Made by a program: the position numbers and the translations under genes. From contig NC_091285.1 in assembly GCF_032444005.1 (NCBI RefSeq), positions 398,226,001 through 398,290,000 on the forward strand: 64,000 bases of DNA. Reading direction: 5' to 3'. Source of the stretch: Ranitomeya imitator. Taxonomy: Eukaryota. Numbering within the stretch: the first letter of the stretch is position 1; the number at the start of each line of letters is the position of its first letter. The notes under the pieces were generated by a model. The model saw only the letters and a list, made by a program, of their open reading frames with translations. It searched no databases and was not told the DNA's origin. This document shows, one piece after another, positions 1 to 64,000 of the stretch.

Positions 1-669
1 TGACCCCCAATGTATTCAAAGAGAAAGATTTTACAGTAATAAAGAAAAGCAGTGCAGAAGACCAGATTCAGGTTGTGTCCTCTACCTAGGAACACTAGGC
101 TAAAACAGAGCTGTCTAGTGTCCGAGGAGAGGGAGGCAACACTTTTGTTCACTTAGCTTCAAGCCTACTAGTGACAGGGCGCATACCCAAGGTGAAGTGG
201 CCCTCAATGCTATTACAAAGAAACCTTGGTATTATTCATTGAAATCCCTCGTGTTTGTATGGCTACGAGTCCAGTGGGCGGTCCTATTCAGTGACTGACA
301 GTCTTCCCTGCATGACTGTGTATGTAGAGATAGCGGTCAATCACTGAGTAGGACCGCCAAATGGGCACATGTATACAAAACACCAAGGATATTAATAAAA
401 GTTATACTGAATCTTTCCAACAAACTTGTGTCATTCTGCTAAGCTTCTCCCACTCCTATACCGTGCTGGCCACAGATTGTATATGCACAATGTCACAGGT
501 TCTTGTTAAGATGTGATCCCAAAACTTTTGTCTGTAAAGTTTATACGCACAACTACCTATTCCCTCTTCACACTGTAGATGAAGTAAAAAGTCACATCCA
601 TGAGAACTACCAGACAGGTAATATCTTAGCACTTTATGTACATGTATGTGGAAAATTAGAAGCACAAAC

Positions 670-753
670 CTTTCATTTTGATAGGATGGCATTTTCGGCT
701 GTGTGCTGCTGTTCTCCAGAAGATACAGACTATAGAATAGATTGTAATGGATC
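670..753 (-). CDS. FBH1: FBH1 exon (IHYNLFYSLYLLENSSTQ...)
   Basis: Matches FBH1 IHYNIFYCLYLQENS. Acceptor is taaccag|G and donor is AG|GTTTGT. 84 bp, phase 2 to 2. Confidence 0.9.
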
Positions 754-2877
754 CTGGTTACATAGTAGAAGCAAAAGAAAAAAAAAATCAAAAGCATATT
801 GGTTATAGCAGTTTCCATTTAACATGCCAATTTATCAGGGAATTGAAATGGAGCAATAGGCATCTAGTGGTCAGATACAGGTATATAGGTATACCAACAG
901 CTTGTGATTGTATGTTTGCACAGGTGTTTGAGAAAAAACAGCTAGTGAGTACTGGTGAAAGGACAATAGGGGCACATGGATGTTTGGGCTGAGCTGTCAT
1001 TTATTATGGCAGAGTTTTTGACAGATTATTTTCAACAGTTGCCATCATATAATGAAAGAGAAACCCAATGGCTACCAGTTGTCTAAATCTATTGTATGAT
1101 AAAATCACAGCCATGTGTAACCAGCCTTACTACACTAGAAACGCGGCCATTTTAGTCAAATAGTGTTTAAAGGAAAATTGTGATTAGGTTGATGCTGACT
1201 GCAACCATGTACAGTTGCTCTGAAATGCTGCAGCAATTCAGAGGATTCCTACTTTGGGGACTAGATGTCTCCGCTGCATGGTCACACACGGTCTCAGGCC
1301 ATCGTCTCCCTGTCCCGATTCCAATGATTGACAGATCTCTCTATGCACAGATATTTTGAGGGACCTGTCAGTCAACTGGAAGGAGGCCCGACATGCCTGC
1401 CAGGGGCCGCATCATACCAGTCTACGGAGACAACTATGCACCAGCAGCTTTCAGTGCATTTCCGAGGATAAGGAATCGCATCAGACTAATGGGCTTTCCA
1501 ATGTCCTGCTCCAGCTGACTGACAAATCCCTTGCCATGTGTGTTCATAAAAGAAACCAGTCAAAGATATCAGGACAAAGAGAAAGAAAACCATCATAAAA
1601 AGCTCTGACAAACGCAGAAATGTCTGCGCTACCACTTTGTGACTTATGGCATTTTCATTCCATTTTTGCCCAGCTCCGACAAAGTGAGAAGAGATGTGCT
1701 GTAAGAGGCGTAGCGACTAGTGATGAGAACGTGCTCTGATAAGGTGTTACCTGCGCATGCTCGTGTGCTAACCGAGTGTCTTCGGCGTGTGTGAAAAATA
1801 TGTTCGAGTCCCCGCGGCTGCATGGCTTGCACCTGTTCAGCAGACACAACACATGCATGGATTGCCTGTCTAACGGCTGAGAGACAAGAAGCCCTAGGGA
1901 CTCTGAGCACACAGAAGACACACAGCTAAACACGTGCAAGCTCAGATAACGCCTAATTGAGCATGTTCACTAGTCACTAGTAGTGACCCCTGCTTGCCAC
2001 ATTCATGGCGAGCGGCGGGGTACCTTGCGCCATGAATCTTACTCCAATCCCAAAGGCGCATACCTCTTTCCACCTTGCCTGACTAGTTAGGGTCGCACGC
2101 CTAATTAGACGCCTCGCCCTCCAGCCCACCACCTCATCAAAGCTGCTGTGAAAAACACCAGTATTGGTAAATTGGGGCCACCGTCTCTTGCGGCTTTTCA
2201 GAATAAAGCATACATGGAGGCAATCAATAAATACTGGCTGCATGAATCTAAAGACAGGATCCCTTTAAAGTGAACATCCACCTTTTAACAAAAGGTTATT
2301 TAGGTTTCGGTGTCTTCAGTAATAAGTTCACTATATGAAATGCATATTTTCCATCTTTATTAATCATGCTGATAAATATCAGTACTTTTTAAACTTGCAA
2401 TTACAATCAACCCATTACCCGGATATTGCCAATTTTCTTTTTTGTTTTTGTTTAGCTAGTTACCTAGATTACAGGTATCTGCTGCAGTCTATCAGCAACG
2501 GAACAAACGTGCAGTTCTTGCAAGTTTTACGGAGCTTGTAAGCACTGCACTGAAGCAGTCAGGGATTGCTGGAGCGTGCAGTTCGCTCCTGATTCCGGCC
2601 AACTAAAGCTTAACTGCACTTCTGATGGTTCAGAAGCGAAGCTGCCTCATACAACAGCACTGAGAGCACACCGTTTCATCAAGAAGAGCAAAGACTGTTG
2701 CTGGTCTAAACTGTCAATCAAGCGGCAGCGCCAGCTCCTCAGCAGCCATGATGTTGGGAGCAGTGCACTCAGATACCTGGTATTGCAGATCCTTCAAGTT
2801 GACAAATCTGACCAAAATGCTTGTGTGACTTATTTTAGATTTTTTTTTTTTTTTACAGTGTTAATTTTCACTTGTAC

Positions 2878-3068
2878 CTATTACTGATGCCAATCTTCTG
2901 TTCTCTCATGGCAAAGAGACAGGTTGCTAAACAGTATAATGCTTCCATGACTTCAATAAGCGGTAAAGGAGATCTAGAATGTCGCAAGCATCTCATTAAC
3001 CTCTGAATATCATCTACTTTGGTTGATAGGAGAACAATTACTGCGAATAATGCCCAAGCATTCACTTT
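2878..3068 (-). CDS. FBH1: FBH1 exon (KVNAWALFAVIVLLS...AMREQKIGISNR)
   Basis: Matches FBH1 VNIWALVAAVVLLS...LYAMRE.GINISNR. Acceptor is ttttattgcag| and donor is AG|GTACAA. 191 bp, phase 0 to 2. Confidence 0.95.
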
Positions 3069-3539
3069 CTGCAATAAAAAAAAAAAAAAAGATTAATGCA
3101 TTAAAAGGGAAGTAATCATAAAGGGACCCATTTTTGTGTTAAATGTCGCTTTTTTATAAAGTTTTGGCATTATTTTTTCTTTTTTAAAGGCAGCCTGTCA
3201 CCAGAAAAAATAAAAAAAAACTTATTAACTGACAGATATGTGTTAATCTGCAGGTTAATAGCATTTTTAACCTGCCTGTGCCTGCACTTAGCTGAACACT
3301 GCAGGGAGAAAGCTAACATTATTCCCCCTGCAGAGGTCCAGTTTCAGTCACAGGAGCGCACTGGTGCTGGTTCAGTCACTGCTCTGAATATACAGAGCAG
3401 CCGCTGTAACTGTGCCCCCGGCCCTGCCTGACCCTGACACTGCACTGCGGCCGGCTGTCAGTCAGGGTGCCTGGGGAGCCCCGCTTCCAAAGCACATTCT
3501 CCACTGCACAGCTGAATCATGACGTGCACCCACCATTAA

Positions 3540-6745: not shown

Positions 6746-6790
6746 TTTAGGTTTTAGTTTCTAGTGGATCCAGACAGTCTCTTCTAATCA

Positions 6791-9194
6791 TTTCAAAAAC
6801 CTGACCTGCACATCCAAACATAGACTGAGTGTGAACAGGTGCTGAACCCAGAGTCGCCAACTCGTATATAGTTAAATAAATAGGGCAGCACACTGCAGCG
6901 CCAAAACATGTAAACTTGAAAAAACGAAATTTGAACTGCATTACTGCACTAGAAATATGAAAAATGAGAGCTTTTAACGCACAAAAATGGCCAATTTTAT
7001 GTGTACCTCGTAGCCACGTTAAGGCATCTCTCTTATACGAGGTCCTAAGTTTGACCTACCTCATTGAGAATAAACGTCTCCATCTGAACGGGTACATGTG
7101 AAACCTCTTCTTGGACTCAAATTCTCTCTCTCTGTGGAGGGGTATTGGACCTACTATAATTAAAACACCTGAAGCTAGGAGGCGGGGAGTGCACGATCAG
7201 AAGGCTAGAGAATACATTTCAAAAACCTGACCTGCACATCCAAACATAGACTGAGTGTGAACAGGTGCTGAACCCAGAGTCGCCAACTCGTATATAGTTA
7301 AATAAATAGGGCAGCACACTGCAGCGCCAAAACATGTAAACTTGAAAAAACGAAATTTGAACTGCATTACTGCACTAGAAATATGAAAAATGAGAGCTTT
7401 TAGCGCACAAAAATGGCCAATTTTATGTGTACCTCGTAGCCACGTTAAGGCATCTCTCTTATACGAGGTCCTAAGTTTGACCTACCTCATTGAGAATAAA
7501 CGTCTCCATCTGAACGGGTACATGTGAAACCTCTTCTTGGACTCAAATTCTCTCTCTCTGTGGAGGGGTATTGGACCTACTATAATTAAAACACCTGAAG
7601 CTAGGAGGCGGGGAGTGCACGATCAGAAGGCTAGAGAATACATTTCAAAAACCTGACCTGCACATCCAAACATAGACTGAGTGTGAACAGGTGCTGAACC
7701 CAGAGTCGCCAACTCGTATATAGTTAAATAAATAGGGCAGCACACTGCAGCGCCAAAACATGTAAACTTGAAAAAACGAAATTTGAACTGCATTACTGCA
7801 CTAGAAATATGAAAAATGAGAGCTTTTAGCGCACAAAAATGGCCAATTTTATGTGTACCTCGTAGCCACGTTAAGGCATCTCTCTTATACGAGGTCCTAA
7901 GTTTGACCTACCTCATTGAGAATAAACGTCTCCATCTGAACGGGTACATGTGAAACCTCTTCTTGGACTCAAATTCTCTCTCTCTGTGGAGGGGTATTGG
8001 ACCTACTATAATTAAAACACCTGAAGCTAGGAGGCGGGGAGTGCACGATCAGAAGGCTAGAGAATACATTTCAAAAACCTGACCTGCACATCCAAACATA
8101 GACTGAGTGTGAACAGGTGCTGAACCCAGAGTCGCCAACTCGTATATAGTTAAATAAATAGGGCAGCACACTGCAGCGCCAAAACATGTAAACTTGAAAA
8201 AACGAAATTTGAACTGCATTACTGCACTAGAAATATGAAAAATGAGAGCTTTTAGCGCACAAAAATGGCCAATTTTATGTGTACCTCGTAGCCACGTTAA
8301 GGCATCTCTCTTATACGAGGTCCTAAGTTTGACCTACCTCATTGAGAATAAACGTCTCCATCTGAACGGGTGATGCCTTAACGTGGCTCAGTCTATGTTT
8401 GGATGTGCAGGTCAGGTTTTTGAAATGTATTCTCTAGCCTTCTGATCGTGCACTCCCCGCCTCCTAGCTTCAGGTGTTTTAATTATAGTAGGTCCAATAC
8501 CCCTCCACAGAGAGAGAGAATTTGAGTCCAAGAAGAGGTTTCACATGTACCCGTTCAGATGGAGACGTTTATTCTCAATGAGGTAGGTCAAACTTAGGAC
8601 CTCGTATAAGAGAGATGCCTTAACGTGGCTACGAGGTACACATAAAATTGGCCATTTTTGTGCGCTAAAAGCTCTCATTTTTCATATTTCTAGTGCAGTA
8701 ATGCAGTTCAAATTTCGTTTTTTCAAGTTTACATGTTTTGGCGCTGCAGTGTGCTGCCCTATTTATTTAACTATATACGAGTTGGCGACTCTGGGTTCAG
8801 CACCTGTTCACACTCAGTCTATGTTTGGATGTGCAGGTCAGGTTTTTGAAATGTATTCTCTAGCCTTCTGATCGTGCACTCCCCGCCTCCTAGCTTCAGG
8901 TGTTTTAATTATAGTAGGTCCAATACCCCTCCACAGAGAGAGAGAATTTGAGTCCAAGAAGAGGTTTCACATGTACCCGTTCAGATGGAGACGTTTATTC
9001 TCAATGAGGTAGGTCAAACTTAGGACCTCGTATAAGAGAGATGCCTTAACGTGGCTACGAGGTACACATAAAATTGGCCATTTTTGTGCGCTAAAAGCTC
9101 TCATTTTTCATATTTCTAGTGCAGTAATGCAGTTCAAATTTCGTTTTTTCAAGTTTACATGTTTTGGCGCTGCAGTGTGCTGCCCTATTTATTT
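6791..9194. repeat. 426-bp monomer concatemer: about 3.7 direct copies plus about 1.9 inverted copies, flanked by a 15-bp TSD
   Basis: Units start at 6791, 7217, 7643 and 8069. Inverted copies run 8388-9194 (period 8388 to 8814). AGTCTCTTCTAATCA occurs at 6776-6790 and 9195-9209. Confidence 0.95.
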
Positions 9195-9592
9195 AGTCTC
9201 TTCTAATCAGACTTATGGGCTGTAGACATTTATCACTTATAAATCAATTATTTCTTACGGTTTTCCAATGTGTCCGTTAAAAATATTGTCTATCAGCGAT
9301 TTTCTGATAAGCTATCCAGGAAAAATAAAAACATTTGTAACCCTGGCGGGGATACAGTATTCAATGCATGTGTGAATAATGCTTTTAATTAAAAACAGGA
9401 ATATCTGATGAGCAATTCATGCCCGTATTAATTACTATACACTTCATTGCATTTTAGACCACTGGTTGGTAATAACATTCAATCCAACTCTAAAGGGTAT
9501 TCTCATTTATGTGTAATGGTATGTCCAAAGGTATGCTTTGTCCCCTTTTTCTCACTGTAGGGTGCCTGAGTGCTGATGTACAGTCCACTTAA

Positions 9593-18589: not shown

Positions 18590-21515
18590 GGATGAGATAT
18601 ATATATATGATATAGATAGAAACCGCTATGACGTTGTTCGAAATAATTTTCACACTACGATCCCTGACCGTATCTTGGCATAGTTGTAGAGTCTCCCATA
18701 TCGCCTTTAGTTCTCTGTAATTGGAGGATCTTCCCTGCTCTTCCAGGGACCATGTACCCTGCAGGTATCGTCCTTCCACTTCAGCGCCAAATCCTTTCAG
18801 ACATTCGTCGGTGGGGATACGGACAGAGAGAAAGGATCCATGGTACTCCTTCCCAGAGATTGTTCCTGGATGTACACCACGACAGGGAATTCTTTAGATT
18901 GGCCGAGATTCTCATTTTCCTGTCTAGGCCGGAGGTATGTCTGTTGCAGACTGATGGGACCGTAACTCGTAGCTGTCTTGAGTGGGCCTGACTCCATCTT
19001 ACGCCTGGGATGAGGGATGTCATCAGGCCTAGGACCCTCATAGCATATCTGATGGAAAGTCTTGTTCCTCTGTAATACCCGGATCCTGCTTCTGAGCTCC
19101 TCCTGCTTTACGAGGGGAAGGGAAGACATCCTGCCATGGTAAATCGAGGAGGACTCCTAAAAACCCCTTCTGGGTACCTGGAAGTAGATTGGATTTTTCC
19201 CAGTTGACGCGCCAACCCAGACCCTCTAGAATGTCAATAGTCTGAGACAGCTGCTGATTGAGGAGGAAAGCAGAGTACGCTACTACACTGTGTTCCAAAT
19301 TATTACGCAAATTGGATTTAAGTGTCATAAATATTTAATTGTTTTGCTTTTCAAATAAACTTGTCGATGTTATTGTGTCTCAGGGCTCAATGGATCACTA
19401 AAATCAATCTTAAACACATGTGATAATGGGTTTGCCAGGTGATTCTAATTAAAGGAAAACTACTTAAAAATGATGTTCCACATTATTAAGGAGGCCACAG
19501 GTTTCAAGCAATATGGAAAACAAAAAGGATCTCTCTGCTGCTGAAAAGCATTAAATAGTGAAATGCCTTAGACAAGGTATGAAAACATTAGATATTTCAC
19601 GAAAACTTGAGTGATCATCATACTGTGAAGAGACTTGTGACTGAAACAGAGCACAGACAGAGTTCATGCAGATAAAGGTATAATGAGGAAGGTTTCTGCC
19701 AGACAAATTCATTGGATTAAGAGTGCAGTTGCCAAAACACCATGACAAAGCAGTAAACAGCTCTTTGAAGCTGCTGTTGACTCTGAAGTCCCTCGAACCT
19801 CAAGGTGTAGGATACTTCAAAGGATTGCTGTGGTGCATAAACCTACTATTCGGCCACCCCTAAAAAGTGTTCACTAGCAGTGGGCCCATACATACATGAA
19901 GACTAATTTTCAAACAGTCTTGTTTACTGATGAGTGTCAAGCAGCCCTGGATGGTCCAGATGGATGGAGTAGTGGATGGTTGGTGGATGGCCATCATGTC
20001 CCAACAAGGCTGCGATGTCAGCAAGGAGGTGGAGGAGTCATGTTTTGGGCCAGAATCATTAGGAAACAGCTGGTAGGGCCCTTGAAGGTTCCTGAAGGTG
20101 TGAAAATGACCTCTGCAAAGTATATAGAGTTTCTGACTGACAACTTTCTTCCATGGTATAAAAAAAAGAAACGTGCCTTCAGGAGCAAAATCATCTTCAT
20201 GCATGACAATGCACCATCTCATGCTGCAAAGAATACCTCAGAGTCATTGGCTGCTATGGGCATAAAAGGAGATAAACTCATGGTGTGGCCACCATCTTCC
20301 CCAGACGTCAACCCTATAAAGAACTTTTGGAGTATCATCAAGCAAAAGATCTATGAGGGTGGGAGGCAGTTCACATCAAAACAGCAGCTCTGGGAGGCTA
20401 TTCTGACTTCATGCAAAGAAATATAAAGCAGAAACTCTCCATAAACTCACAAGTTCAATGGATGCAAGAATTGTGAAGGTGATATCAAAGAAGGGGTCCT
20501 ATGTTAACATGTAACTTGGCCTGTTAGGATGTTTTGGAGTGAAATAGGTTTTTTGTTCAGTGAATGTGACCGCCTAATGCTGCAAATTCCAAAAATGAGC
20601 ATTTTCAGTTCTTTAAAATATATCAATGTTTAGAAATTCTACTGTGCCTAATAATTTGGAACAGTGCATTGTGAGTTTTTATTCATTTTGGAGATTATAC
20701 TGTTATCATTGGGAGGTTTCTTCAATAAAATTCGATGTATACTTTAACGGGTGGTGACTTATTAGACTGACTCATTTGCAGCGAACATTTAGGAAAATCA
20801 GAGAAAAATGTCATTTGCATAATAATTTGGAACATGGTGTAGAAGGATGTCATCTAAGTATGGAACCACAATAATTCCTTTCCTCCTCAGAAAGGCTGCC
20901 ACCTCCATCATTATCTTCTTAAAGATATGAGGAGCTGAGGCTAGGCCAAGTGGAAGGCATGTGAACTGGAAATGGCGTCTTGCTCCCTGATGGTCTAGTG
21001 CTAAGTGATAGAGATGCATACTAAGATCTAATGTGCACATGGCAGAGTCCTTCCCTATCAACTGAATGCTTGATTTTATCGTCTGCATTTTTAATTTTTT
21101 GCACCTGGCCGATTGATTCAGGGGTTTTAAGTTTATAATGGTACGATATTTCCCCAAGTGCTTTTTTAAAGAAAAGGGAGGAATAGTAACCCTGATCTAA
21201 CTCTGAAATAGGTACCGGCTCGACTGCTCCTAATTCTAAGAGGTTCCTGTCATCCACCCAGAGTATTCAAGGCAAAGAGGGATTGGGGTTTGGCGGTGCA
21301 AAAACCGTTGAGGAGGGAGATAGAAGTCTATCCTGTGTCCTTCTTCTATGGTCTGCAGGATCCAATGATTGTCTGTAATGGTCTGCCATTTTTCCAGAAA
21401 AAACTGCAGTCTCCCTTCTAGCTTCAAGATCTCCTCTGTGGGCTGGAAGATAACTGGGTGGATCTACCTCTCCTCCCCCTTGGGGTAACTCCACCTACCG
21501 TCTTTCCCTTACCCA
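18590..21515 (-). mobile_element. DIRS RT/RNaseH fragment split by a Tc1
   Basis: RTIINLKPLN, LPLGLASAPHIF, PYLDDILL, LGWRVNWEKS and SSNYRELKAI motifs. Many frameshifts. Confidence 0.85.
19286..20839 (+). mobile_element. Tc1 element with both TIRs, degenerate transposase
   Basis: TA|CACTGTGTTCCAAATTATT...AATAATTTGGAACATGGTG|TA. ORF remnant has LFTDE, MHDNAPSH and WPPSSPDVNPIKN. Confidence 0.9.
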
Positions 21516-24700: not shown

Positions 24701-25570
24701 CTATGATATCAGATCGACTCCTACTGATGGCACTGGTTCAAAACAAACCCCATGAGCCCAGGATCACCATCACGTTCAGGCCACATGCCATCAATGGGTT
24801 ATGGCGGAACTTTACCTTTCTTTAAAGAGCGTGCATGTTCGCAAAACCTCTTGTACAAAGGAACGGATCGTTTTATCAATGAAGAAAGTTAAATGGTATT
24901 TAAGGGGCTGGTTAACTTGTTCAAGTCAGGGAGAAGTGGGAATACATGTGAAACAGCTGTTGCTTAACCTGCATGGTTTCTGTAAGATCTCACCCGACGA
25001 TCCAAAAAGATTTACTTGGTCGTAGAATATCTAACATAAAGCTATAGTGTTAATTTGCAGGTTTGGGTTATGGAGGTGCCAAGCCGCACTATTGAAAATG
25101 CAGCACACGGGAGAAAATGAGCCGTTTCTCCTGGAAGCAGCCGGATGTCAGTCATGCCTGTGTGTCGCGAGCAATTACAGTCACTGCTCACAGCACGAGT
25201 GACTGCTGTAGGTACACCCCATCATCGTCATCGGGCATTAGAGAACCCTGGCAGAGTCCGTTATCCTTTGGGGAAAAAAAAAAAAAAAAAACACACCCCT
25301 TCCTGTTGATTGATTGCTCTAGTCTGGTGATGTCAGAGCTCTCGGTGACTCGGCCAGGATACCACACCGCCGTGAAGACACTGGGTTACTGTTCTACGCA
25401 CCCGGTGGCAAGTTTTTAATTTAGAACTATAACAAAACCACAAAACAGTTACGCGCCACACACTGCTGCTATTATCATGCAATTGCCTGGGTTCGGTTTA
25501 ATAGACAATTTTTTGATGTCAGGTTCCCTTTAAGTCAAAAGAATCTTTACACTAAAAACCATGTACAAAC

Positions 25571-26043
25571 CAGGGGGTCATGGACCAAGGACTTCCATTT
25601 ATGACAAACCAAGCTGACATTCTGATAGAGGTCCACGATTGGGAGGAAGCCGAATATACGCTGCAGCAGTTCAGCAGGGAATTGGTTTATGTGTCCACAT
25701 GGTGCATAGTTCTGGTCAGTCACACCCAACAGGCCATAACAAGATGCAGACAGTGAGTCCAGCATGAGACTCATTTCATCATCATCGTCCTCCTCAAAGA
25801 ATTCGCTGGATGATGATCGGACGTCCTCTCCTTGGCCATGTACGGAAGAAAATGGCCTTTTCCTGCTGAAGACGGGATCTGATGGAGACACGTCATTATC
25901 ACTGTCAATCTCGACAGCGGCCTCCTCCACGGCACAAGACGCATCCTCCGCCATCTCAGGCGTATGGCTCCTGCTGGTGGATTGTTCTGTGCTTACATCA
26001 CCATGTGAAGGACTGAAAGAAGAGCTGGTTTTTCTTCCTTTAC
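25571..26043 (-). CDS. FBH1: FBH1 F-box exon
   Basis: Encodes DSLSASCYGLLG...FPAELLQRIFGFLPIVDLYQNVSLVCHKWKSLVHDPL, an F-box matching FBH1. Acceptor is ctccctatag| (phase 1, fits the previous exon) and donor is CTG|GTTTGT (phase 0). 473 bp. Confidence 0.95.
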
Positions 26044-26162
26044 CTATAGGGAGATAAAGGAAATATGTTACAAATAAGAACATATCCCAGCAAACGTTAC
26101 AGATTACTGTAGTGTGCAGGCAAATATCACTTAAGGAAAATTATACAGATGTAGAAGTCGAG

Positions 26163-30993: not shown

Positions 30994-32601
30994 CAGGTCC
31001 TTCTCAAAAAATTAGCATATAGTGTTAAATTTCATTATTTACCATAATGTAATGATTACAATTAAACTTTCATATATTATAGATTCATTATCCACCAACT
31101 GAAATTTGTCAGGTCTTTGTTTTAATACTGATGATTTTGGCATACAACTCCTGATAACCCAAAAAACCTGTCTCAATACATTAGCATATTTCACCCATCC
31201 AATCAAATAAAAGTGTTTTTTAATAACAAACAAAAAAACCAACAAATAATAATGTTCAGTTATGCACTCAATACTTGGTCGGGAATCCTTTGGCAGAAAT
31301 GACTGCTTCAATGCGGCGTGGCATGGAGGCAATCAGCCTGTGACACTGCTGAGATGTTATGGAGGCCCAGGATGCTTCAATAGCGGCCTTAAGCTCATCC
31401 AGAGTGTTGGGTCTTGCGTCTCTCAACTTTCTCTTCACAATATCCCACAGATTCTCTATGGGGTTCAGGTCAGGAGAGTTGGCAGGCCAATTGAGCACAG
31501 TAATACCATGGTCAGTAAACCATTTACCAGTGGTTTTGGCACTGTGAGCAGGTGCCAGGTCGTGCTGAAAAATGAAATCTTCATCTCCATAAAGCATTTC
31601 AGCCGATGGAAGCATGAAGTGCTCCAAAATCTCCTGATAGCTAGCTGCATTGACCCTGCCCTTGATGAAACACAGTGGACCAACACCAGCAGCTGACATG
31701 GCACCCCACACCATCACTGACTGTGGGTACTTGACACTGGACTTCAGGCATTTTGGCATTTCCTTCTCCCCAGTCTTCCTCCAGACTCTGGCACCTTGAT
31801 TTCCGAATGACATGCAAAATTTGATTTCATCAGAAAAAAGTACTTGGGACCACTTAGCAACAGTCCAGTGCTGCTTCTCTGTAGCCCAGGTCAGGCGCCT
31901 CTGCCGCTGTTTATGGTTCAAAAGTGGCTTTACCTGGGGAATGCGGCACCTGTAGCCCATTTCCTGCACACGCCTGTGCACGGTGGCTCTGGATGTTTCC
32001 ACACCAGACTCAGTCCACTGCTTCCTCAGGTTCCCCAAGGTCTGGAATCGGTCCTTCTCCACAATCTTCCTCAGGGTCCGGTCTCCTCTTCTCGTTGTAC
32101 AGCGTTTTCTGCCACATTGTTTCCTTCCAACAGACTTACCATTGAGGTGCCTTGATACAGCACTCTGGGAACAGCCTATTTCTTGAGAAATTTCTTTCTG
32201 GGTCTTACCCTCTTGCTTGAGGGTGTCAATGATGGCCTTCTTGACATCTGTCAGGTCGCTAGTCTTACCCATGATGGGGGTTTTGAGTAATGAACCAGGC
32301 AGGGAGTTTATAAAAGCCTCAGGTATCTTTTGCATGTGTTTAGAGTTAATTAGTTGATTCAGAAGATTAGGGTAATAGGTCGTTTAGAGAACCTTTTCTT
32401 GATATGCTAATTTATTGAGACAGGTTTTTTGGGTTATCAGGAGTTGTATGCCAAAATCATCAGTATTAAAACAATAAAAGACCTGACAAATTTCAGTTGG
32501 TGGATAATGAATCTATAATATATGAAAGTTTAATTGTAATCATTACATTATGGTAAATAATGAAATTTAACACTATATGCTAATTTTTTGAGAAGGACCT
32601 G
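30994..32601 (-). mobile_element. Full-length Tc1 element with ~200-bp inverted repeats
   Basis: TA|CAGGTCCTTCTCAAAAAATTAGCATA...TATGCTAATTTTTTGAGAAGGACCTG|TA. The arms are nearly identical. Confidence 0.95.
31268..32272 (-). CDS. Intact Tc1 DD34E transposase (334 aa from MGKTSDL)
   Basis: Uninterrupted ORF with VLFSDE, FQHDLAPAH and SPDLNPIEN. I counted 34 residues between the second D and the E. Confidence 0.92.
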   Translation of the reverse strand: MGKTSDLTDVKKAIIDTLKQEGKTQKEISQEIGCSQSAVSRHLNGKSVGRKQCGRKRCTTRRGDRTLRKIVEKDRFQTLGNLRKQWTESGVETSRATVHRRVQEMGYRCRIPQVKPLLNHKQRQRRLTWATEKQHWTVAKWSQVLFSDEIKFCMSFGNQGARVWRKTGEKEMPKCLKSSVKYPQSVMVWGAMSAAGVGPLCFIKGRVNAASYQEILEHFMLPSAEMLYGDEDFIFQHDLAPAHSAKTTGKWFTDHGITVLNWPANSPDLNPIENLWDIVKRKLRDARPNTLDELKAAIEASWASITSQQCHRLIASMPRRIEAVISAKGFPTKY

Positions 32602-46194: not shown

Positions 46195-47687
46195 ACTTAA
46201 AAAAGTGTGAAACAACTGAAATTGTGTCTTATATTCCATGTTCTTCAAAACAGCCACCTTTTACTTTGCTGACTGCTTTGCACACTCTTGGCATTCTCTT
46301 GATGAGCTTCAAGAGGTAGTCCCCAGGAATGTTCTTCCAACAATCTTGAAGGAGTTCCCAGAGATGCTTAGCACTTGTTGGCCCTTTTGCCTTCACTCTG
46401 CGGTCCAGCTCACCCCAAACCATCTCGATTGGGTTCAGGTCTGGTGACTGTGGAAGCCAGGTCATCTGGCGTAGCACCCCATCACTCTCCTTCTTGGTCA
46501 AATAGCCCTTATACAGCCTGGAGGTGTGTTTGGGGTCATTGTCCTGTTGAAAAATAAGTGATGGTCCAACTAAACGCAAACCGGATGGAACAGCATGCCA
46601 CTGCAAGATGCTGTGGTTGCCATGCTGGTTCAGTATGCCTTCAATTTTGAATAAATCCCCAACAGGGTCATCAGCAAAGCACCACCACACCATCACACAT
46701 CCTCCTCCATGCTTCACAGTGGGAACCAGGCATGTAGAGTCCATCCGTTCACCTTTTCTGCGTCACACAAAGACACGGTGGTTGGAACCAAAGATCTCAA
46801 ATTAGGACTCATCAGACCAAAGCACAGATTTCCACTGGTCTAATGTCCATTCCTTGTGTTCTTTAGCCCAAACAAGTCTCTTCTGCTTGTTGCCTGTCCT
46901 TAGCAGTGGTTTCCTAGCAGCTATTTTACCATGAAGGTCTGCTGCCAAAGTCTCCTCTTAACAGTTGTTGTAGAGATGAGTCTGCTGCTAGAACTCTGTG
47001 TGGCATTGACCTGGTCTCTAATCTGAGCTGCTGTTAACCTGCGATTTCTGAGGCTGGTGACTCAGATAAACTTCCTGAGAACTAATCCTGAGAAGCAGAG
47101 GTGACTCTTGGTCTTCCTTTCCCGGGACGGTCCTCATGTGAGCCAGTTTCTTTGTAGCGCTTGATGGTTTTTACAACTGCACTTGGGGACACATTCAAAG
47201 TTTTCCCAAATTTTCGGACTGATGACTGACCTTCATTTCTTAAAGTAATGATGACCACTCGTTTTTTCTTTACTTAGCAGCATTTTTCTTGCCATAATAC
47301 AAATTCTAACAGTCTATTCAGTAGGACTATCAGCTGTGTATACACCAGACTTCTGCTCAACCCAACTGATGGTCCCCAACCCCATTTATAAGGCAAGAAA
47401 TCCCACTTATTTACCCTGACAGGGCACACCTGTGAAGTGAAAACCATTCCCGGTGACTACCGCTTGAAGCTCATCAAGAGAATGCCAAGAGTGTGCAAAG
47501 CAGTCATCAAAGCAAAGGTGGCTACTTTGAAGAACCTAGAATATAAGACATATTTTCAGTTTCACACTTTTTTGTAAAGTATATAATTCCACATGTGTTA
47601 ATTCATAGTCTTAATGCCTTCAGTGTGAATGTACAATTTTCATAGTCATGAAAATACAGAGAAATCTTTAAATGAGAAGGTGTGTCC
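46195..47687 (-). mobile_element. Tc1 element, degenerate, ends truncated
   Basis: TVKHGGGCVMVW, FQQDNDPKH and PQSPDLNPIE motifs. The N-terminal part is frameshifted. Confidence 0.85.
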
Positions 47688-50851: not shown

Positions 50852-53067
50852 TGTAACGCTCGCGCCCAGACTGGTTGGCACGGGCGTGTGGACGCACTGG
50901 ACCACAGACCAGACTTCCCTGGAAGAGGTTTAAATAGGTAGCTTCCTAGGTGTTCGCTGGAGCCTCTGATGGTGAGGTCAGACTTGTGTGGCAGGTAGCT
51001 ACCAGGTACCACTCCAGGGTGGTGTCTGGCTGTGGATGCTCATCCCACCGGGGAACAGGACACAGACAGGCAGTCACAGCTGTGACACTGACTGATGACC
51101 GGATACAGCAGAGGCCCTAACGGGCGGACTGGCTTGACGGAGACTCAAGCAGGCGGGCACGGCTGGCACTCAGGCAGGACAGGAGGACTGAACTGGAACA
51201 CTGGCAGAACCAGTATGGACCGGTATACAGGCAGGCACAGCAAGTACGTAGGAACAGGTAGGGACCTGTTCTGACAGGAGGAACGGAGGAAGGGAAAGAC
51301 CGCAAGAGCGGAAACAAAGCAGGAGCACAGGAGGAGGAGCCAAGGGCAAGAACAGAAACGCAGGAAGCGGAGCCAAGAGCGGGAAGCAGAGTAAAGTACA
51401 AAAATGCAGGAGGCGGAGCCAAGAGCAGGAGGCGAAGCCAAGTGCGTAAACGCAGGAGGCGGAGCCAATAGCAGGAGACATAGAAACGAAGCAAGGTAGA
51501 TCCGCAAGGAGCGGAGCCAGGTAGAACCCCAAGGAGCGGAGCCGCAGAGCAAGGTCACAGAGTGCAGGGCTGAATGTAGAGCAAAGCTAGACCCAGAGTG
51601 CAGAGCAGAGCAGGACACTGAGTGCAGAGCCAAGAGCAGAGCAGGACACAGAATGCAGAGCCAAGAGCAGCAGAGCAAGACACAAAGGGCAGAGCAAGAC
51701 ACAGAGAGCAGAGCCGAGAGGTGCTGAGCCACTGGTAGTGGCAAACAGAGCAGAGAGATAAGGAGAGGTACACACAGCAGAGTGGAAATGGTTAACAAGC
51801 AAGGAGACAACAGGAACGGACATAGACCAGAGTTCAGACAGGAACAGACACAGATACTAGAACTTGACACGGATACAGACCTGCGGAATGCAGGCCTCAT
51901 AGTCAGACACAGACGTAACGGAACACAGATTCAGACCAGGGTACGACGCCCCACTGGGTGGCGAACACAGAGACAGAACCAGACACCTCAGCAGCAAAGT
52001 ACTGACTGAGGAAGTAAGTTTGCTCAGGCGTCCTCCAGTGGGTGAGGACGCCTTAAGAATCAGAGGCCTCTAGACTATTGGCCAGGGACACCTTAGGGAG
52101 GTGCACACAGACTGAATAAGAAACAGGAGCTGCTGGCGCTGCCCCCCTATGCACACAGACAGAAAGTGTACACAGAGCAAGCGGCCATGAAGCACACGGC
52201 ATGAAGCCAGCAGCAGACAAGGAAAATGGTGTGCACTCAGGTCAGGGACAAGGAGGTGCTGGTAAACTGACCGTGAGGTCAAGTCAATCATTCAAAAAAG
52301 ATTACCGCACACTCAAGACTGGTAAGATGCAAAAGGTGTATGCCAATTTTATTGAAGAAAACAAAACAAAAAAGAAGTGGTTGCCACATTCATATTCATT
52401 TGAAATAGACAAAAAACCCGACGTTTCGACCCTCCCGGGTCTTACTCATTTGGTTACTCAAGTCCTTTGACATAGATGCATAATAGTGGCAGTGGTAGGG
52501 GGTGTACGACCGATCCCTTGTTAAGGCACAACCTTATAATAAAGCCAGTCCGGGCAGAAGTGTCCCGGGAGCACAAAATCTGGGTGGTGAGGGCCGTTAG
52601 ACACCTAGTGGGTCTGAAAAGGGTCCCTGGGAGGATTAGCGGCGCATCCCGCGCCTTGCTGCGATGTCCTGGGGGGAGACCCGGAAAGACTTCTGCCCGG
52701 ACTGGCTTTATTATAAGGTTGTGCCTTAACAAGGGATCGGTCGTACACCCCCTACCACTGCCACTATTATGCATCTATGTCAAAGGACTTGAGTAACCCC
52801 ATGAGTAAGACCCGGGAGGGTCGAAACGTCGTTTTTTTGTCTATTTCAAATGAATATGAATGTGGCAACCACTTCTTTTTTGTTTTGTTTTCTTCAATAA
52901 AATTGGCATACACCTTTTGCATCTTACCAGTCTTGAGTGTGCGGTAATCTTTTTTGAATGGAGCCAGCAGCAGACAGATCTCGCAGCATGGCACAGGGTG
53001 AGTGAGTTGATGTATCAAGCAGGTGGGGGATGGAAGGCCATGCAGTGATGCCGGCAGGGTTGTTACA
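50852..53067. mobile_element. Solo LTR (Gypsy-like) with internal minisatellites
   Basis: TGTAAC...GTTACA termini and a 5-bp TSD CATCA (50847-50851, 53068-53072). No pol sequence. Confidence 0.8.
52289..52960. mobile_element. Penelope-like inverted pseudo-LTR hairpin inside the solo LTR
   Basis: ~272-bp inverted arms with a 127-bp spacer. Each arm carries GACCC-ggga-GGGTC-GAAACGTC...AATAAA. Confidence 0.6.
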
Positions 53068-57345: not shown

Positions 57346-60300
57346 AAAATAGTAGTTACTTACCGATAACGGTATTTCTCTGATCCCATGATGGCACCAC
57401 GGAGAGAGGGGTCCGCCCCCAGGGACAGGAAACCTACAGGTGAAAAAAGGGCGTACCTCTCTCCCACATCAGTTGGATTACAGAGCCTTATACAGAACTT
57501 CAGCTGCAACTCAATATTTGCACAAATTAAACTTAACCTATTTAACTTAACAGAGGCACCGTGACTAAAATTAATTACTAGTACATTACAAAGTGCACAC
57601 CTGTGTGTGAAAAGGGAGGGAATATACGGGTGCCATCATGGGATCAGAGAAATACCGTTATCGGTAAGTAACTACCATTTTCTCTATCCCCATGATGGCA
57701 CCATGGAGAGATTTGCATAGATAGAACTCTTAGGGAGGGACCACTGCTTCTAGAACCCTTCGCCCAAAGATAAGATCAGAGGAGGTCAAGTCTAAACGGT
57801 AATGTTTGAAAAATGTAGACTGGGAAGACCAAGTGGCCGCTCTACATATCTGTTGTATTGAAGCACCAGCTCTCTCCGCCCAGGATGATGCCACTGCTCT
57901 GGTCGAATGAGCCTTTATATTCTCCGGGATGGCTGTCCCGCAGGATGAGTAGGATAGGGCGATGGCGTCTCTTATCCATCTCGCTAACATGGCTTTCGAT
58001 GCTTTTTGTCCCTTCCGTGGACCCTGGAAGCAGACAAACAGAGCCCTATCCTTTCTGCACTCCCTAGTGGCTGATAGATATTGGACCAGACATCTTTTTA
58101 CGTCTAGGGTATGCAGTGTTTTTCCCCCTCATTTTTAGGGTTGGGACAAAAGGAGGGCAAAGAAATCTCTTGCGTTCTGTGAAATTGTGACGCTATTTTA
58201 GGGAGGTAAGCCGGGTCAGTTTTAAGAATGACTCTGTCCTCGAGTATCTGAGTAAAGGGTGGGCATGCAGATAACGGTTGTATATCGCTGACACGACGAG
58301 CCGAGGTTAGGGCCACTAGGAGTGTGGTTTTTAGAGATAAGATCTTTAATGGAACTTCTGCCAGGGGCTCAAAGGGAGGTTTGGTTAGAGCATTTAATAC
58401 AAGGTTTAGATCCCACGGAGGAGAATTGTGGAGGGGAATAGAGCTGGACCTACTTGAGGCTTTAATAAAATCGCATGACCCACCGATTTCTGGCCAAATC
58501 ATAATTATACAGTGCTCCCAAGGCTGCTACCTGAACCTTTAGAGTGCTTGTAGCCAACCCTCTTTCCAAACCTTTCTGTAGGAACTCAAGGATTTTCTCT
58601 ATTGGGATCTCCCCGGACGGGTCTGCGCCCGACACCGACAAGAATTTTTTCCACACTTTCCCATATATTTTAGTGGTTACGAGTTTTCTACTCTGTAATA
58701 GAGTGGACACTAGATTGGGAGAGAACCCTTTATCCCTTAGAAGCCTCCTTTCAAAAGCCAGGCTGTCATTTGTAGATTCTTTACATTGGGGTGAAATACC
58801 GGGCCCTGGGATAGAAGTTTCGGAGTGTCTAATAGAACCCATGGACTTGATATGGACATTTTTCTTAGCCAAGAAAACCATATTCTGCGGGGCCAGAATG
58901 GCGCTATTACTATCACTGTTGCTTCCTCCTCCCGAATTTTCCTCAACACTAAGGGGATGAGCGATATCGGAGGGAACGCGTAGGCGAGGCGATAGTTCCA
59001 AGGAATTGTTAGGGCGTCTAGAGCTACTGGGCTCCCCCGGGGATCGATTGAGCAGAATGTTCTTACTTTGCGGTTTTGACTGTTCGCGAATAGGTCTATT
59101 TCTGGCAGACCCCAGAGATTGCATCCGTCGTTAGGATTTTCTCCGCCGGTAGTGCCCAAGGGACCCCCTTGGTTAAATTCCCTGGGTCTGCCCACCATAC
59201 TAGGGAGTGTATCGTGTTTGATGAGATACTTAATTGCCCGTCTAAATTTCCGTGCAGAGATATGCCTGAATCTAAAGTCTCCCATTGTAGGTCCCGGGAA
59301 TGACATTGTGCCCACTGCACGGCAGGGATACAGGCAGTCATAGAGCCCAGCAGGGACATTGCTTTCCTCAGCGTAGTGACTGGGGATATCGTCAACTGTA
59401 ACACTGCCTGTGTCATTTTTTTAATCTTCCCCTGAGGAAGGTAACACTTCTGCGTGATCGAGTCTAGGACTATCCCTAAGTACTCCTGTACCTGGGATGG
59501 CACTATTTTGGATTTGGGTATGTTTAGCAGCCACCCTAGACTCGACAGTGAAGCATTAACCAGATCCAACTGATGTTTGCAATGTTGGAATGAGGTCCCT
59601 ACCACGAGGAGGTCGTCCAGATAGGGAACTATTAGAACATTCTGTTCCCGTATGTGGGCCATCACTTCTGACATTATTTTTGTGAATACCCGAGGAGCGA
59701 CGGCTATCCCGAAGGGGAGAGCTCGGAATTGGTACTGTTTTACTTCCCACTGGATATTCACTGTCAGTCTGAGATATTTTTGATGATCTCTGTGGATGGG
59801 CACATGGTAATATGCGTCTCGTAAGTCTAAAACAGTCATGAAACACAAGGGAAAGAGTATTTTCACGCAAGATTTTATGGTCTCCATTTTGAAGTGTTGA
59901 ATCTCTAGGAAACTGTTTAATCTTTTGAGATTTATGATCGCTCTGTACGATCCGTCCGGTTTCCTGCGGAGGAAGAGGGGAGCATAGAAGCCCGTGCCTC
60001 TTTCCCGGTATGGGACTTCTTGTAATACCCCTTTCTGGACTAAGTTCAGAATTTCCTCCTGGAGAGCGGACTGTTCGTGTGACTGTTTCTGAGGCGTTAT
60101 CATGAAGGAGTTGCCGGGAGGGATACGAAATTTGAGTCTGAGACCTTCTCGTATTATACCTAAAATCCAGGGACTGTTTAAAATTTTTTCCCATTTTTTT
60201 ATTATCCGGAAGGGGGGGGTGGGGGGGAGGGGGGGGGAAGGGTTGGTGAACAAGAAGCCTCTGTTTATGTTCCTTCTGTCTTCCCATCCGTCTTTATTCC

Positions 60301-62846: not shown

Positions 62847-64000
62847 TATTGCCAATCATACATTTATAGGATAACTGTCCTGCAGGGACTTGTTACAAGA
62901 AATGGACTTGGATGACTGACAAGTCCTCCAGTGTATTATTGATTGTTTTAAAACAAAGAAAAAAAACGTAAGCAGCTTCTCCGCATACGCACTCGGATGC
63001 ATGCTACATATTCCCCAAGTGCTGTGGGTGACCCCAGTTTTAGTACTTTATCTCCAGTTCTATAATACCCCACCAGGTCTCCATTTGAGGATATCACAAA
63101 GAACATATGTCAATTGACGACCTAGCAAAAGGCTACATTCCCCAACTGCAACAAGGACATTCTGCAGAGATATCCACATTTACCGCTGCGGCTACAAATC
63201 TGACGGAGGACTCTAATAACTCGCCCTTTGCATTGTGCCGGGTGAAATTTCCACCTACATCTGCAATATAAATAGACTTGCTGATGATCTCAAACTCGCA
63301 GCTCCCATCAGTTTACACTGTGGATATGTTTTTCAGTATGTGCATAAAATGTTATAATCTCACGCACTATGCTGGACTGTAATATTTATGAAATAATTCA
63401 CAAGGTTTTCGTACCATTGGACTTTTCCTAATATCCCTTGTGCAGCGGACCAGTGGTTGTAGAGGGAACTAAAGCTGAAAAACACTGGTTCACATTCATT
63501 AAAGTGGCCGCACCAAACGTCTGGTGTTACAAGGATCCCGTGACAGATCGTGCCGTCTGGTTTCACGAACTCCTGCACTGGTTAGAAGTCTGTCACCATC
63601 TTATTAAACAGTGCAGGTTTTTGCTCCTTGCCAGCATTGCAAGGGTTTATCTTCTCAGTTGAAGCTCCTGGAGCTTTCGTACCTGGATTGTCTCAACTCT
63701 TCAGTGTTTGCCACTTCCCTCTGCTGTATAGGCTCACCTATGGCGCTTAAGAACTGCCAGTGTTAGTTCTTACTGCCTGTTTGGAGTTGGAGGTGTAGAC
63801 GGTGGTTGGAGTTTGGAGATTAGTTCAGAAGATTGTTGCTTGGAGTTTTATTTGTGTGCACATCCTCATCCTTTCCTGTTTGGTTTTTCCTTCAACTCCC
63901 ATTTTCCACTATGTTTGGCGAGTGCATTTTGCATGATTGTTATTTTCATCTATCTCTGTCCGTTTTCTATTGTTGGTCCGGTTAGTGTTATCCTATGCAC

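What the first reader, a model, noticed from the sequence alone, without database searches (positions are those of the whole stretch)
6776..9209. 426-bp monomer concatemer inserted as one unit, with a partial inversion and a 15-bp TSD
Seen: about 3.7 head-to-tail copies followed by about 1.9 copies in the opposite orientation. The copies are almost identical (I noticed one substitution, near 6976). The array ends in TATTTATTT and is flanked by an exact 15-bp duplication. Known: long TSDs with 5' inversions mark target-primed retrotransposition. Tandem short non-coding monomers with TSDs are the form of non-LTR retrozymes (e.g. newt satellite 2), thought to be copied from circular RNA by Penelope-like machinery. 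Inference: this is a single recent retrotransposition of a multimeric, possibly rolling-circle, RNA rather than satellite expansion in place. The monomer 3' part (CCTCGTATAAG...TTAACGTGG...ATAAAATTGGC...GTGTGCTGCC) lines up loosely with the Penelope-like arm at 52689-52960. I found no canonical hammerhead core, so if it self-cleaves the motif is atypical.
Basis: partly seen in the sequence, partly recalled or inferred. Interest (0 to 1): 0.82.

Follow-up and report, generated by a model that had tools for sequence, protein, structure and literature searches.

The report
Ribozyme-less tandem retroelement insertion, Penelope-style
A 2.4-kb block in a poison-frog genome is one young insertion of about 5.5 identical copies of a 426-base non-coding repeat, pasted in partly back-to-front as Penelope-like jumping genes do. 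The repeat is very abundant and, unlike the related frog "retrozymes", has no recognisable self-cutting RNA motif.

Summary
There are 3.72 antisense and 1.90 sense copies of a 426-bp unit, with one substitution (window 6977). A 15-nt templated filler sits at the inversion joint, and an exact 15-bp target-site duplication flanks the block.

The geometry fits one RNA-templated event primed from both cut target strands, as shown in vitro for a Penelope-like element. The template was at least 5.5 units long, and the two arms overlap by 41 nt.

New here: the unit is a very abundant family. Summed contig depth is about 2 million, against 9.4 on the unique flank. Head-to-tail joints are common and the joint letters are hypervariable. 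The family also occurs in a second species and in runs guessed to be RNA.

- No hammerhead or other Rfam ribozyme was found on either strand.
- An HDV-like fold can be drawn at 9026-9102, but family variation and covariance models do not support it.
- The claimed likeness to 52689-52960 is at chance level.
- No Penelope gene lies in the window, so the mobilising enzyme is inferred.
- Circular versus linear multimeric template cannot be decided.

The scan has noted an apparently similar 423-bp concatemer on other DNA of this genome (unchecked). Verdict: a hammerhead-less variant of the amphibian retrozyme or Penelope-parasite kind, of moderate interest.

The parts
6776..6790 (.). Left copy of the 15-bp target-site duplication AGTCTCTTCTAATCA. 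Its last two bases (CA) could equally belong to the element (2-nt microhomology).
6789..8371 (-). Inverted arm: 1583 nt, or 3.72 units, in antisense. Read in the sense direction it runs from unit position 205 through three full units to position 84. Inferred to be cDNA primed from the top-strand 3' end at ...GGUUUUUGAAAUG.
6977..6977 (.). The only difference among the 5.6 copies: A here and G in the others (sense strand C to T, unit position 321). It is not in a CpG context and is not a common family variant.
8372..8386 (+). 15-nt filler at the inversion joint (17 nt with the CT shared with the next arm). It is an exact sense copy of unit positions 270-286 (GATGCCTTAACGTGGCT). Inferred to be a templated insertion made while the two cDNA ends were joined.
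8387..9195 (+). Sense arm: 809 nt, or 1.90 units, from unit position 43 to the unit's 3' end ...GCUGCCCUAUUUAUUUA. Its first 41 nt are also present, inverted, at the outer end of the other arm.
8769..8770 (+). Head-to-tail unit joint (TATTTATTTA|ACTATATACG). The joint is identical in all five joints of this insertion. Across the family it is hypervariable, with extra or different letters such as CTTG, CTTT, GTA, G, AA and AT.
   Evidence: table 5c and loose ends
9195..9209 (.). Right copy of the 15-bp target-site duplication. Its first A could equally be the last base of the element.
9026..9102 (+). Weak candidate only: an HDV-like double-pseudoknot topology, repeated in every unit. P1 is CCUCGUA/UACGAGG, P2 is GAGAG/CUCUC, P3 is GCC/GGC, L3 is UUAACGU, P1.1 is UA/UA, P4 is a hairpin around GGCC, and J4/2 is CGCUAAAAG.
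   Evidence: Against it.

Best explanation
This is one recent RNA-templated insertion of a non-coding, hammerhead-less 426-nt repeat that belongs to a very abundant family of a poison-frog genome.

Inferred steps:
1. An endonuclease made staggered cuts 15 bp apart.
2. The bottom-strand 3' end primed reverse transcription at the unit's 3' end (...UAUUUAUUUA, 1-nt match) and copied 1.9 units.
3. The top-strand 3' end primed internally at ...UUGAAAUG (2-nt match) and copied 3.7 units further upstream. This gave the inverted arm.
4. The two cDNA ends were joined by microhomology-mediated repair, which left a 15-nt templated filler.
5. Filling the staggered cuts gave the 15-bp duplication.

The template carried at least 5.5 identical units. 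It was either a multi-unit transcript of a homogeneous array or a circular monomer copied round and round.

The enzyme is most likely that of a Penelope-like element. Its reverse transcriptase/GIY-YIG protein cuts and extends both strands and uses multi-copy RNA.
For: Shown:
- Exact 15-bp duplication at the two ends of the block.
- 5.6 copies with a single difference.
- The outer end of the inverted arm (unit position 84) and the inner end of the sense arm (position 43) overlap by 41 nt. This is the expected picture when two primers work on one template.
- 1-2 nt microhomologies at both ends and at the filler.
- All five unit joints of this insertion are identical, although the joint is hypervariable across the family. 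The joints were therefore copied from a template and not made afresh.
- The family is dispersed and abundant. 11,146 contigs of the source run lie on the unit, in four identity bands: 3342 at 99% or more, 4085 at 95-99%, 2997 at 90-95% and 722 below 90%. Summed depth is about 2 million, against 9.4 on the unique flank.
- Contigs of another run leave the unit exactly at 9195 into other sequence.
- A 140-nt contig at single-copy depth matches the flank perfectly and stops at the first base of the duplication.

From the literature:
- Penelope-like insertions are partial tandems with an adjacent inverted 5'-truncated copy (PMC8557442).
- The Anolis Poseidon protein cuts and extends both strands, initiates internally on the RNA, is modelled on multi-copy mRNA, and does not need hammerhead cleavage in vitro (PMC11167929).
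- Non-autonomous derivatives of hammerhead-less Penelope clades give multicopy head-to-tail insertions.

Unchecked scan notes report hammerhead retrozymes and a full Penelope element in this genome with the same tandem-plus-inverted pattern and 13-16 bp duplications.
Against: - No Penelope-like gene lies in the window. The only reverse transcriptase ORFs are of LTR-retroelement type: an RNase H/integrase ORF and one whose best matches are retroviral reverse transcriptases.
- The unit shares no detectable sequence with anything else in the window.
- Its likeness to the fold-back at 52289-52960 is at chance level.
- A stem followed by a short AT-rich tail at the 3' end would also suit a CR1/L2-type LINE partner.
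- The cut sites (CA^GAC and CT^GTC) do not match the ATT preference reported for the Anolis enzyme.
- Whether the runs that hold the unit are RNA is only a guess by the tool.
- Neither the structure nor an empty allele was checked with long reads.
Confidence: 0.62

Rival explanations
1. Retrozyme-like cycle with a circular RNA. Unit-length RNA is cut out of a multimeric transcript by an unrecognised self-cleaving motif or a host nuclease and ligated into a 426-nt circle. The reverse transcriptase then copies it rolling-circle fashion, which gives the identical units. This differs from the best explanation only in the form of the template.
For: 5.5 units, including all five joints, are identical apart from one base. 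The unit joint is hypervariable between subfamilies, as expected if each lineage descends from its own end-joining event (table 5c and loose ends). Circles are documented for amphibian hammerhead retrozymes (PMC7229834). An HDV-like topology exists on the sense strand, and only 1 of 400 shuffles gives such a hit.
Against: No hammerhead core and no Rfam ribozyme were found, even when 116 nt were searched alone. The sense-strand fold is only marginally more stable than shuffles (z = -1.73) and is not rod-like. No junction of this insertion falls at the predicted cleavage site. The contig data cannot show circles. A young homogeneous source array would give the same identity between units.
Confidence: 0.25
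2. Mobilisation by a LINE (CR1/L2-type) with classical twin priming. The unit acts as a SINE-like partner whose 3' stem and short AT-rich repeat are recognised by the LINE reverse transcriptase.
For: The 3' end is a GC-rich stem (GGCGCUGCAGUGUGCUGCC) followed by UAUUUAUUUA, which resembles stringent LINE/SINE tails (own knowledge). An inversion with a small overlap and a 15-bp duplication is the twin-priming picture known from L1 (own knowledge). Scan notes report young CR1 elements in this genome (unchecked).
Against: There is no poly(A). The nick sites are not T-rich. Head-to-tail multimers are the norm for this family, which is typical of Penelope-type elements and not of SINEs. Unchecked notes report the same architecture in this genome for hammerhead retrozymes and a full Penelope element. 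No LINE in the window shares the tail.
Confidence: 0.15
3. A DNA-level event. A rolling-circle-amplified extrachromosomal circle of the satellite, or a fold-back replication error, was captured at a staggered double-strand break by end joining.
For: Microhomologies and a templated filler are hallmarks of alternative end joining. Abundant tandem repeats readily form DNA circles (own knowledge).
Against: One end lies exactly at the family's unit boundary, where other copies also end. An apparently similar 423-bp concatemer with a duplication and an inverted head is noted on another piece of this genome (unchecked). The 41-nt overlap geometry is what two-primer reverse transcription predicts.
Confidence: 0.07
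4. Assembly artefact. A collapsed or chimeric palindromic read structure was placed into unique sequence.
For: Perfect 809-nt inverted repeats are hard to assemble, and Penelope-type structures are known to trouble assemblies (PMC8557442).
Against: Both flanks are specific and carry an exact 15-bp duplication. The joint has a filler with microhomology. One unit carries a private substitution. An artefact would not produce these features.
Confidence: 0.03

Closest known systems
Non-LTR retrozymes of amphibians (newt satellite 2; axolotl hammerhead repeats; Cervera and de la Pena 2020, PMC7229834; Li et al. 2026 preprint 10.64898/2026.07.22.740005)
   Same: A non-coding tandem unit in the 150-450 bp size range. 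GC is 42%. Copy number is very high. The target-site duplication is long. The insertions are multimeric. Unchecked scan notes report Penelope-like elements in the same genome.
   Different: The defining type I hammerhead is absent on both strands, and none of the family's common variants fall at its nearest partial matches to the core. The predicted RNA is not strongly self-paired. Circular RNA has not been shown.
Insertion architecture of Penelope-like elements (pseudo-LTR partial tandems with an inverted 5'-truncated copy; Craig et al. 2021, PMC8557442; Frangieh et al. 2024, PMC11167929)
   Same: A head-to-tail tandem plus an adjacent inverted 5'-truncated part. Both target strands were used as primers. 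Initiation on the RNA was internal and used 1-2 nt of homology. The template had several units.
   Different: There is no ORF and no hammerhead. No similarity to an autonomous element was found, though only this window could be searched. The cut-site context is not the reported ATT.
Non-autonomous Chlamys elements such as MRC1 of Chlamydomonas (PMC8557442)
   Same: Hammerhead-less non-coding parasites of Penelope-like elements that give multicopy head-to-tail insertions.
   Different: They occur in green algae and depend on N-terminal-endonuclease Penelope clades, which are not reported in vertebrates. They share their 3' ends with known autonomous partners. No partner is known here.
L1 twin priming (5' inversion of LINE-1 insertions)
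   Same: An inverted 5' part and a sense 3' part, a small overlap at the inversion point, and a 15-bp duplication.
   Different: There is no poly(A) tail, no TTTT/AA nick site and no LINE body. The template is a multimer of a short unit.
HDV-like ribozymes at the 5' ends of retrotransposons (R2, RTE, L1Tc; PMC3185411, PMC7761336)
   Same: A nested double-pseudoknot topology can be drawn in each unit. Its L3 loop (UUAACGU) recalls the CPEB3 ribozyme loop as I remember it (UUCACGU).
   Different: There is no G.U pair at the cleavage site. P1.1 is made of A-U pairs. J4/2 is long. No covariance-model match was found. The helix is broken in a large share of family members. The site is not at the unit boundary.

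Membership tests
Non-LTR retrozyme | Type I hammerhead ribozyme in each monomer | tested here: not met
   Rfam found no hammerhead hit at gathering score or at E<=10 on 3 kb, 426 nt or 116 nt. A scan for the CUGANGA core, with selected one-mismatch variants and GAAA downstream, found nothing usable on either strand. No common family variant (10% or more of depth) falls at the unit's nearest partial matches to the core (by inspection).
Non-LTR retrozyme | Short (150-450 bp) non-coding tandem monomers of low GC | tested here: met
   The period is 426. GC is 42%. Every frame has 2 to 12 stop codons per unit, and the longest ORF is 64 aa.
Non-LTR retrozyme | Expressed as unit-length circular RNA | not testable with these tools
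   The runs that hold the unit are only guessed to be RNA, and they are kept as contigs, which cannot show circles, ends or strand.
Non-LTR retrozyme | Target-site duplication longer than the 4 bp of plant retrozymes, where present | tested here: met
   15 bp, exact.
Penelope-type insertion (non-autonomous) | Partial or multiple head-to-tail tandem plus an adjacent inverted 5'-truncated copy within one duplication | tested here: met
   The definition is from PMC8557442.
Penelope-type insertion (non-autonomous) | 3' end shared with an autonomous Penelope-like element | tested here: inconclusive
   The window holds no Penelope ORF. The unit matches nothing else in the window. Its likeness to the fold-back at 52289-52960 is at chance level. 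The rest of the genome could not be searched.
Penelope-type insertion (non-autonomous) | One-sided 30-40 bp tail extension | tested here: inconclusive
   In a homogeneous multimer a tail cannot be told from the next unit. The two outer ends lie at different unit positions, 0 and 84.
L1-type twin priming | Poly(A) 3' end and a T-rich nick site | tested here: not met
   The 3' end is UAUUUAUUUA. The nick contexts are GACT^GTCT and ATCA^GACT.
HDV-like ribozyme | Nested double pseudoknot (P1, P1.1, P2, P3, P4) with a C in J4/2 | tested here: inconclusive
   The topology is present at 9026-9102. With the strict descriptor, 1 of 400 dinucleotide shuffles gives a hit, but the descriptor was widened after the hit had been seen.
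HDV-like ribozyme | G.U wobble at the cleavage site, G-C pairs in P1.1, and conservation or covariation of the helices | tested here: not met
   The first P1 pair is C-G and P1.1 is U-A/A-U. G9059>C makes up 17-89% of depth in the four runs laid (37% in the source run), with no change listed at its partner 9029. L3 differs in most copies: 9046 T>G and 9050 C>A. There is no covariance-model match.
Helitron or other rolling-circle DNA transposon | No target-site duplication; insertion between A and T | tested here: not met
   An exact 15-bp duplication is present.

The most novel reading that the evidence does not exclude
The 426-nt family is a vertebrate retrozyme that has swapped the hammerhead for another self-cleaving motif. 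The HDV-like fold at 9026-9102, present in the young subfamily, is the candidate. Under this reading unit-length circles are still made and copied rolling-circle fashion. It would be the first retrozyme-type circular-RNA retroelement with a non-hammerhead ribozyme.
Probability: 0.06. Interest if true: 0.85.

Novelty: new variant of a known kind. Interest (0 to 1): 0.42.

Why it matters
Animal non-LTR retrozymes are found, and defined, by their hammerhead. This family has the same size, abundance and Penelope-style insertion scars but no detectable ribozyme, so hammerhead-based searches would miss it.

If it is mobilised by Penelope-like enzymes, it is in vivo support for the in vitro result that hammerhead cleavage is not needed for insertion. 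It would also show that multimeric head-to-tail insertions do not by themselves prove a ribozyme-made circle.

The locus is also a very clean record of one event. Both priming sites, the overlap and a templated filler are all readable, which is useful for working out how these insertions are completed.

Tried and rejected
- **Rfam.** I searched the whole window at gathering score, and 3 kb, 426 nt and 116 nt at E<=10. There was no ribozyme or other credible hit. The fold-back at 52289-52960 also gave no hammerhead hit.
- **Hammerhead core.** A regular-expression scan allowing selected one-mismatch variants of the core found nothing.
- **tRNA-like head.** GGTTCAGCACC resembles a B box, but ARAGORN found no tRNA. 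Six runs of four or more T per unit on the sense strand (four of them five or more) argue against long Pol III transcripts.
- **Coding potential.** There is none. 426 is divisible by 3, but every frame has stop codons.
- **Likeness to 52689-52960.** It is not above chance.
- **Other copies through the unit's small ORFs.** Exact-product look-ups of the 56-aa and 45-aa ORFs found nothing on record.
- **Autonomous partner in the window.** The reverse transcriptase ORF at 59096-60664 is of retroviral type and is flanked by inverted repeats. It is not Penelope.
- **Reads on the whole array.** I did not attempt this, because read laying turns away stretches with long repeats. One unit plus the right flank was laid instead, so the inversion joint and the left flank were not checked against reads.
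- **HDV-like fold.** A loose descriptor gave hits in 9 of 20 shuffles. The strict one was tuned after the hit had been seen. The local fold is not unusually stable, z = -0.97.

Full report
**What is there**

Window 6776-9209 holds a 426-bp unit. It occurs as 3.72 copies on one strand (6789-8371) and 1.90 copies on the other (8387-9195). The two blocks are perfect reverse complements. Only one base differs among all copies: A at window 6977 where the others have G, which is unit position 321.

The block is flanked by the exact 15-bp repeat AGTCTCTTCTAATCA, at 6776 and 9195. This sequence occurs nowhere else in the window.

Between the two blocks lies a 15-nt filler (8372-8386). It is an exact sense copy of unit positions 270-286 and shares 2 nt (CT) with the start of the sense arm.

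**Geometry**

I number the unit from the base after ...TATTTATTTA.
- The sense arm runs from position 43 to the unit end.
- The inverted arm, read in sense, runs from position 205 through three full units to position 84.
- The first 41 nt of the sense arm are thus present again, inverted, at the left end.

This is the picture expected if two primers worked on one template. The bottom-strand 3' end primed at the unit's 3' end, with one shared base. The top-strand 3' end primed further upstream at ...UUGAAAUG, with two shared bases. The template therefore had at least 5.52 units.

The filler with microhomology looks like a templated insertion made when the two cDNA ends were joined. That step is inference.

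**What the family is**

Earlier notes of this scan say the genome is a poison frog's. They also say it holds many hammerhead retrozymes and Penelope-like elements with the same tandem-plus-inverted pattern and 13-16 bp duplications (unchecked notes).

I laid public contigs on one unit plus the right flank.
- **Abundance.** In the probable source run, 11,146 contigs lie on the unit, in four identity bands: 3342 at 99% or more, 4085 at 95-99%, 2997 at 90-95% and 722 below 90%. Summed word depth is about 1-3 million on the unit and 9.4 on the unique flank. The tool warns that this is no copy number, so I take it only as "of the order of 10^5 units".
- **Subfamily.** At several sites the letter of this copy is the minority, for example 9004, 9018, 9086 and 9157. 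This copy therefore belongs to a young subfamily.
- **Joints.** Head-to-tail joints (9191-9195 back to 8770-8772) are common. They carry different letters between the two sides (CTTG, CTTT, GTA, G, AA, AT). Loose-end consensus strings show quite different linkers in other subfamilies and in a second species. The joint is therefore hypervariable between lineages, yet all five joints inside this insertion are identical. They were copied from a template and not made anew.
- **Second species.** A contig from a second species has the exact joint, with four differences in 270 nt.
- **Shared terminus.** Contigs of another run leave the unit exactly at 9195 into unrelated sequence, so this terminus is shared by other loci.
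- **Possible empty site.** A 140-nt contig at single-copy depth (8.3) matches 9195-9288 without a difference and stops at the first base of the duplication. It may be an empty allele or a paralogue of the host repeat. I could not see its other 46 letters.

Runs guessed to be RNA, from four or five studies, hold half to two thirds of the unit's sampled words. None is on record as RNA.

**Ribozymes**

Rfam gives nothing on either strand: at gathering score on the whole window, or at E<=10 on 3 kb, on one unit or on 116 nt. There is no CUGANGA...GAAA core even when selected one-mismatch variants are allowed. No common family variant falls at the unit's nearest partial matches to the core (by inspection). 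The unit is non-coding and has no tRNA-like head.

A descriptor search of my own found one HDV-like double-pseudoknot topology on the sense strand, at 9026-9102. With a strict descriptor only 1 of 400 shuffles gave any hit. However, I widened two spacers after seeing the hit, so that figure flatters it.

Several things count against the fold:
- There is no G.U pair at the cleavage site, and P1.1 is made of A-U pairs.
- J4/2 is 9 nt long.
- The local fold is not unusually stable.
- There is no covariance-model match.
- In the family, G9059>C makes up 17-89% of depth across the four runs, with no change listed at its partner 9029.
- The L3 loop differs in most copies.
- No junction of this insertion falls at the predicted cut.

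I keep it only as a low-probability candidate.

**Link to Penelope**

That stretch is itself a fold-back with 272-nt arms. It has a 15-bp repeat at 52205 and 52962, so it is another insertion of the same architectural type, but it is unrelated in sequence.

The window has no Penelope ORF. The reverse transcriptase at 59096-60664 is of retroviral type. The enzyme is therefore inferred from architecture and from the literature:
- Penelope-like insertions are partial tandems with an adjacent inverted 5'-truncated copy (PMC8557442).
- The purified Anolis Poseidon protein cuts and extends both strands, starts reverse transcription inside the RNA, is modelled as using multi-copy mRNA, and does not need hammerhead cleavage (PMC11167929).
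- Hammerhead-less Penelope clades have non-autonomous derivatives that insert as head-to-tail multimers.
- A 2026 preprint argues that animal retrozymes are non-autonomous Penelope derivatives.

**Verdict**

The locus is a real, young, single insertion of a multimer, made by target-primed reverse transcription from both strands. It is most likely Penelope-type.

The form of the template cannot be decided here. The identity of the units and the hypervariable joint lean slightly towards end-joined units somewhere in the family's history.

The family fails the defining test of a retrozyme, which is the hammerhead, while it works like one in every other respect tested. I class it as a new variant of a known kind, of moderate interest.

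The scan has a first-reader note of a 423-bp non-coding multimer with a duplication and an inverted head on another piece of this genome (s1-294819). It is probably the same family, but it is unchecked.

Noticed in passing
window 52205-52976: A second fold-back insertion: arms 52289-52561 and 52689-52960 (97-100% complementary) with a 127-nt spacer. The exact 15-bp repeat AGCCAGCAGCAGACA lies at 52205 and 52962. The left copy is 69 nt outside the arm, which may be a one-sided tail. The arms carry GACCCGGGAGGGTCGAAACGTC, which looks like hammerhead helix II plus GAAAC, but no CUGAUGA box is present and Rfam gives no hit.
   Followed up: partly
window 57346-62848: An element bounded by 116-nt inverted repeats (57373-57488 and 62733-62848, 91% complementary). 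It holds a 522-aa ORF (59096-60664, minus strand) with a retroviral-type reverse transcriptase domain and a weak LAP2alpha-like N-terminal match. It looks more like DIRS or Ngaro than Penelope.
   Followed up: partly
window 9210-9320: The right flank of the insertion is itself a moderately repeated sequence. Summed contig depth is 300-3500, against 9.4 further right. The 426-nt multimer therefore landed inside another repeat.
   Followed up: no
window 9195-9288 (contig record 7 of run X1): A 140-nt contig at single-copy depth matches the flank without a difference and ends its match exactly at the first base of the right duplication. It may be an empty allele of this insertion in the sequenced individual, or a paralogous empty copy.
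   Followed up: no
window 6771-6780 and 9205-9213: Both inferred nick sites have the form C-W^G-W-C: top strand CA^GAC and bottom strand CT^GTC. The target around the left nick is nearly palindromic (AGACAGTCT). This may be chance.
   Followed up: no
window 31268-32335, 19896-20426, 46229-46744: Tc1/mariner-type DDE transposase ORFs. One of them (355 aa, with HTH and DDE_3 domains) appears intact.
   Followed up: no
window 25547-26083: A 178-aa ORF on the minus strand with an F-box domain. It may be a host gene exon.
   Followed up: no
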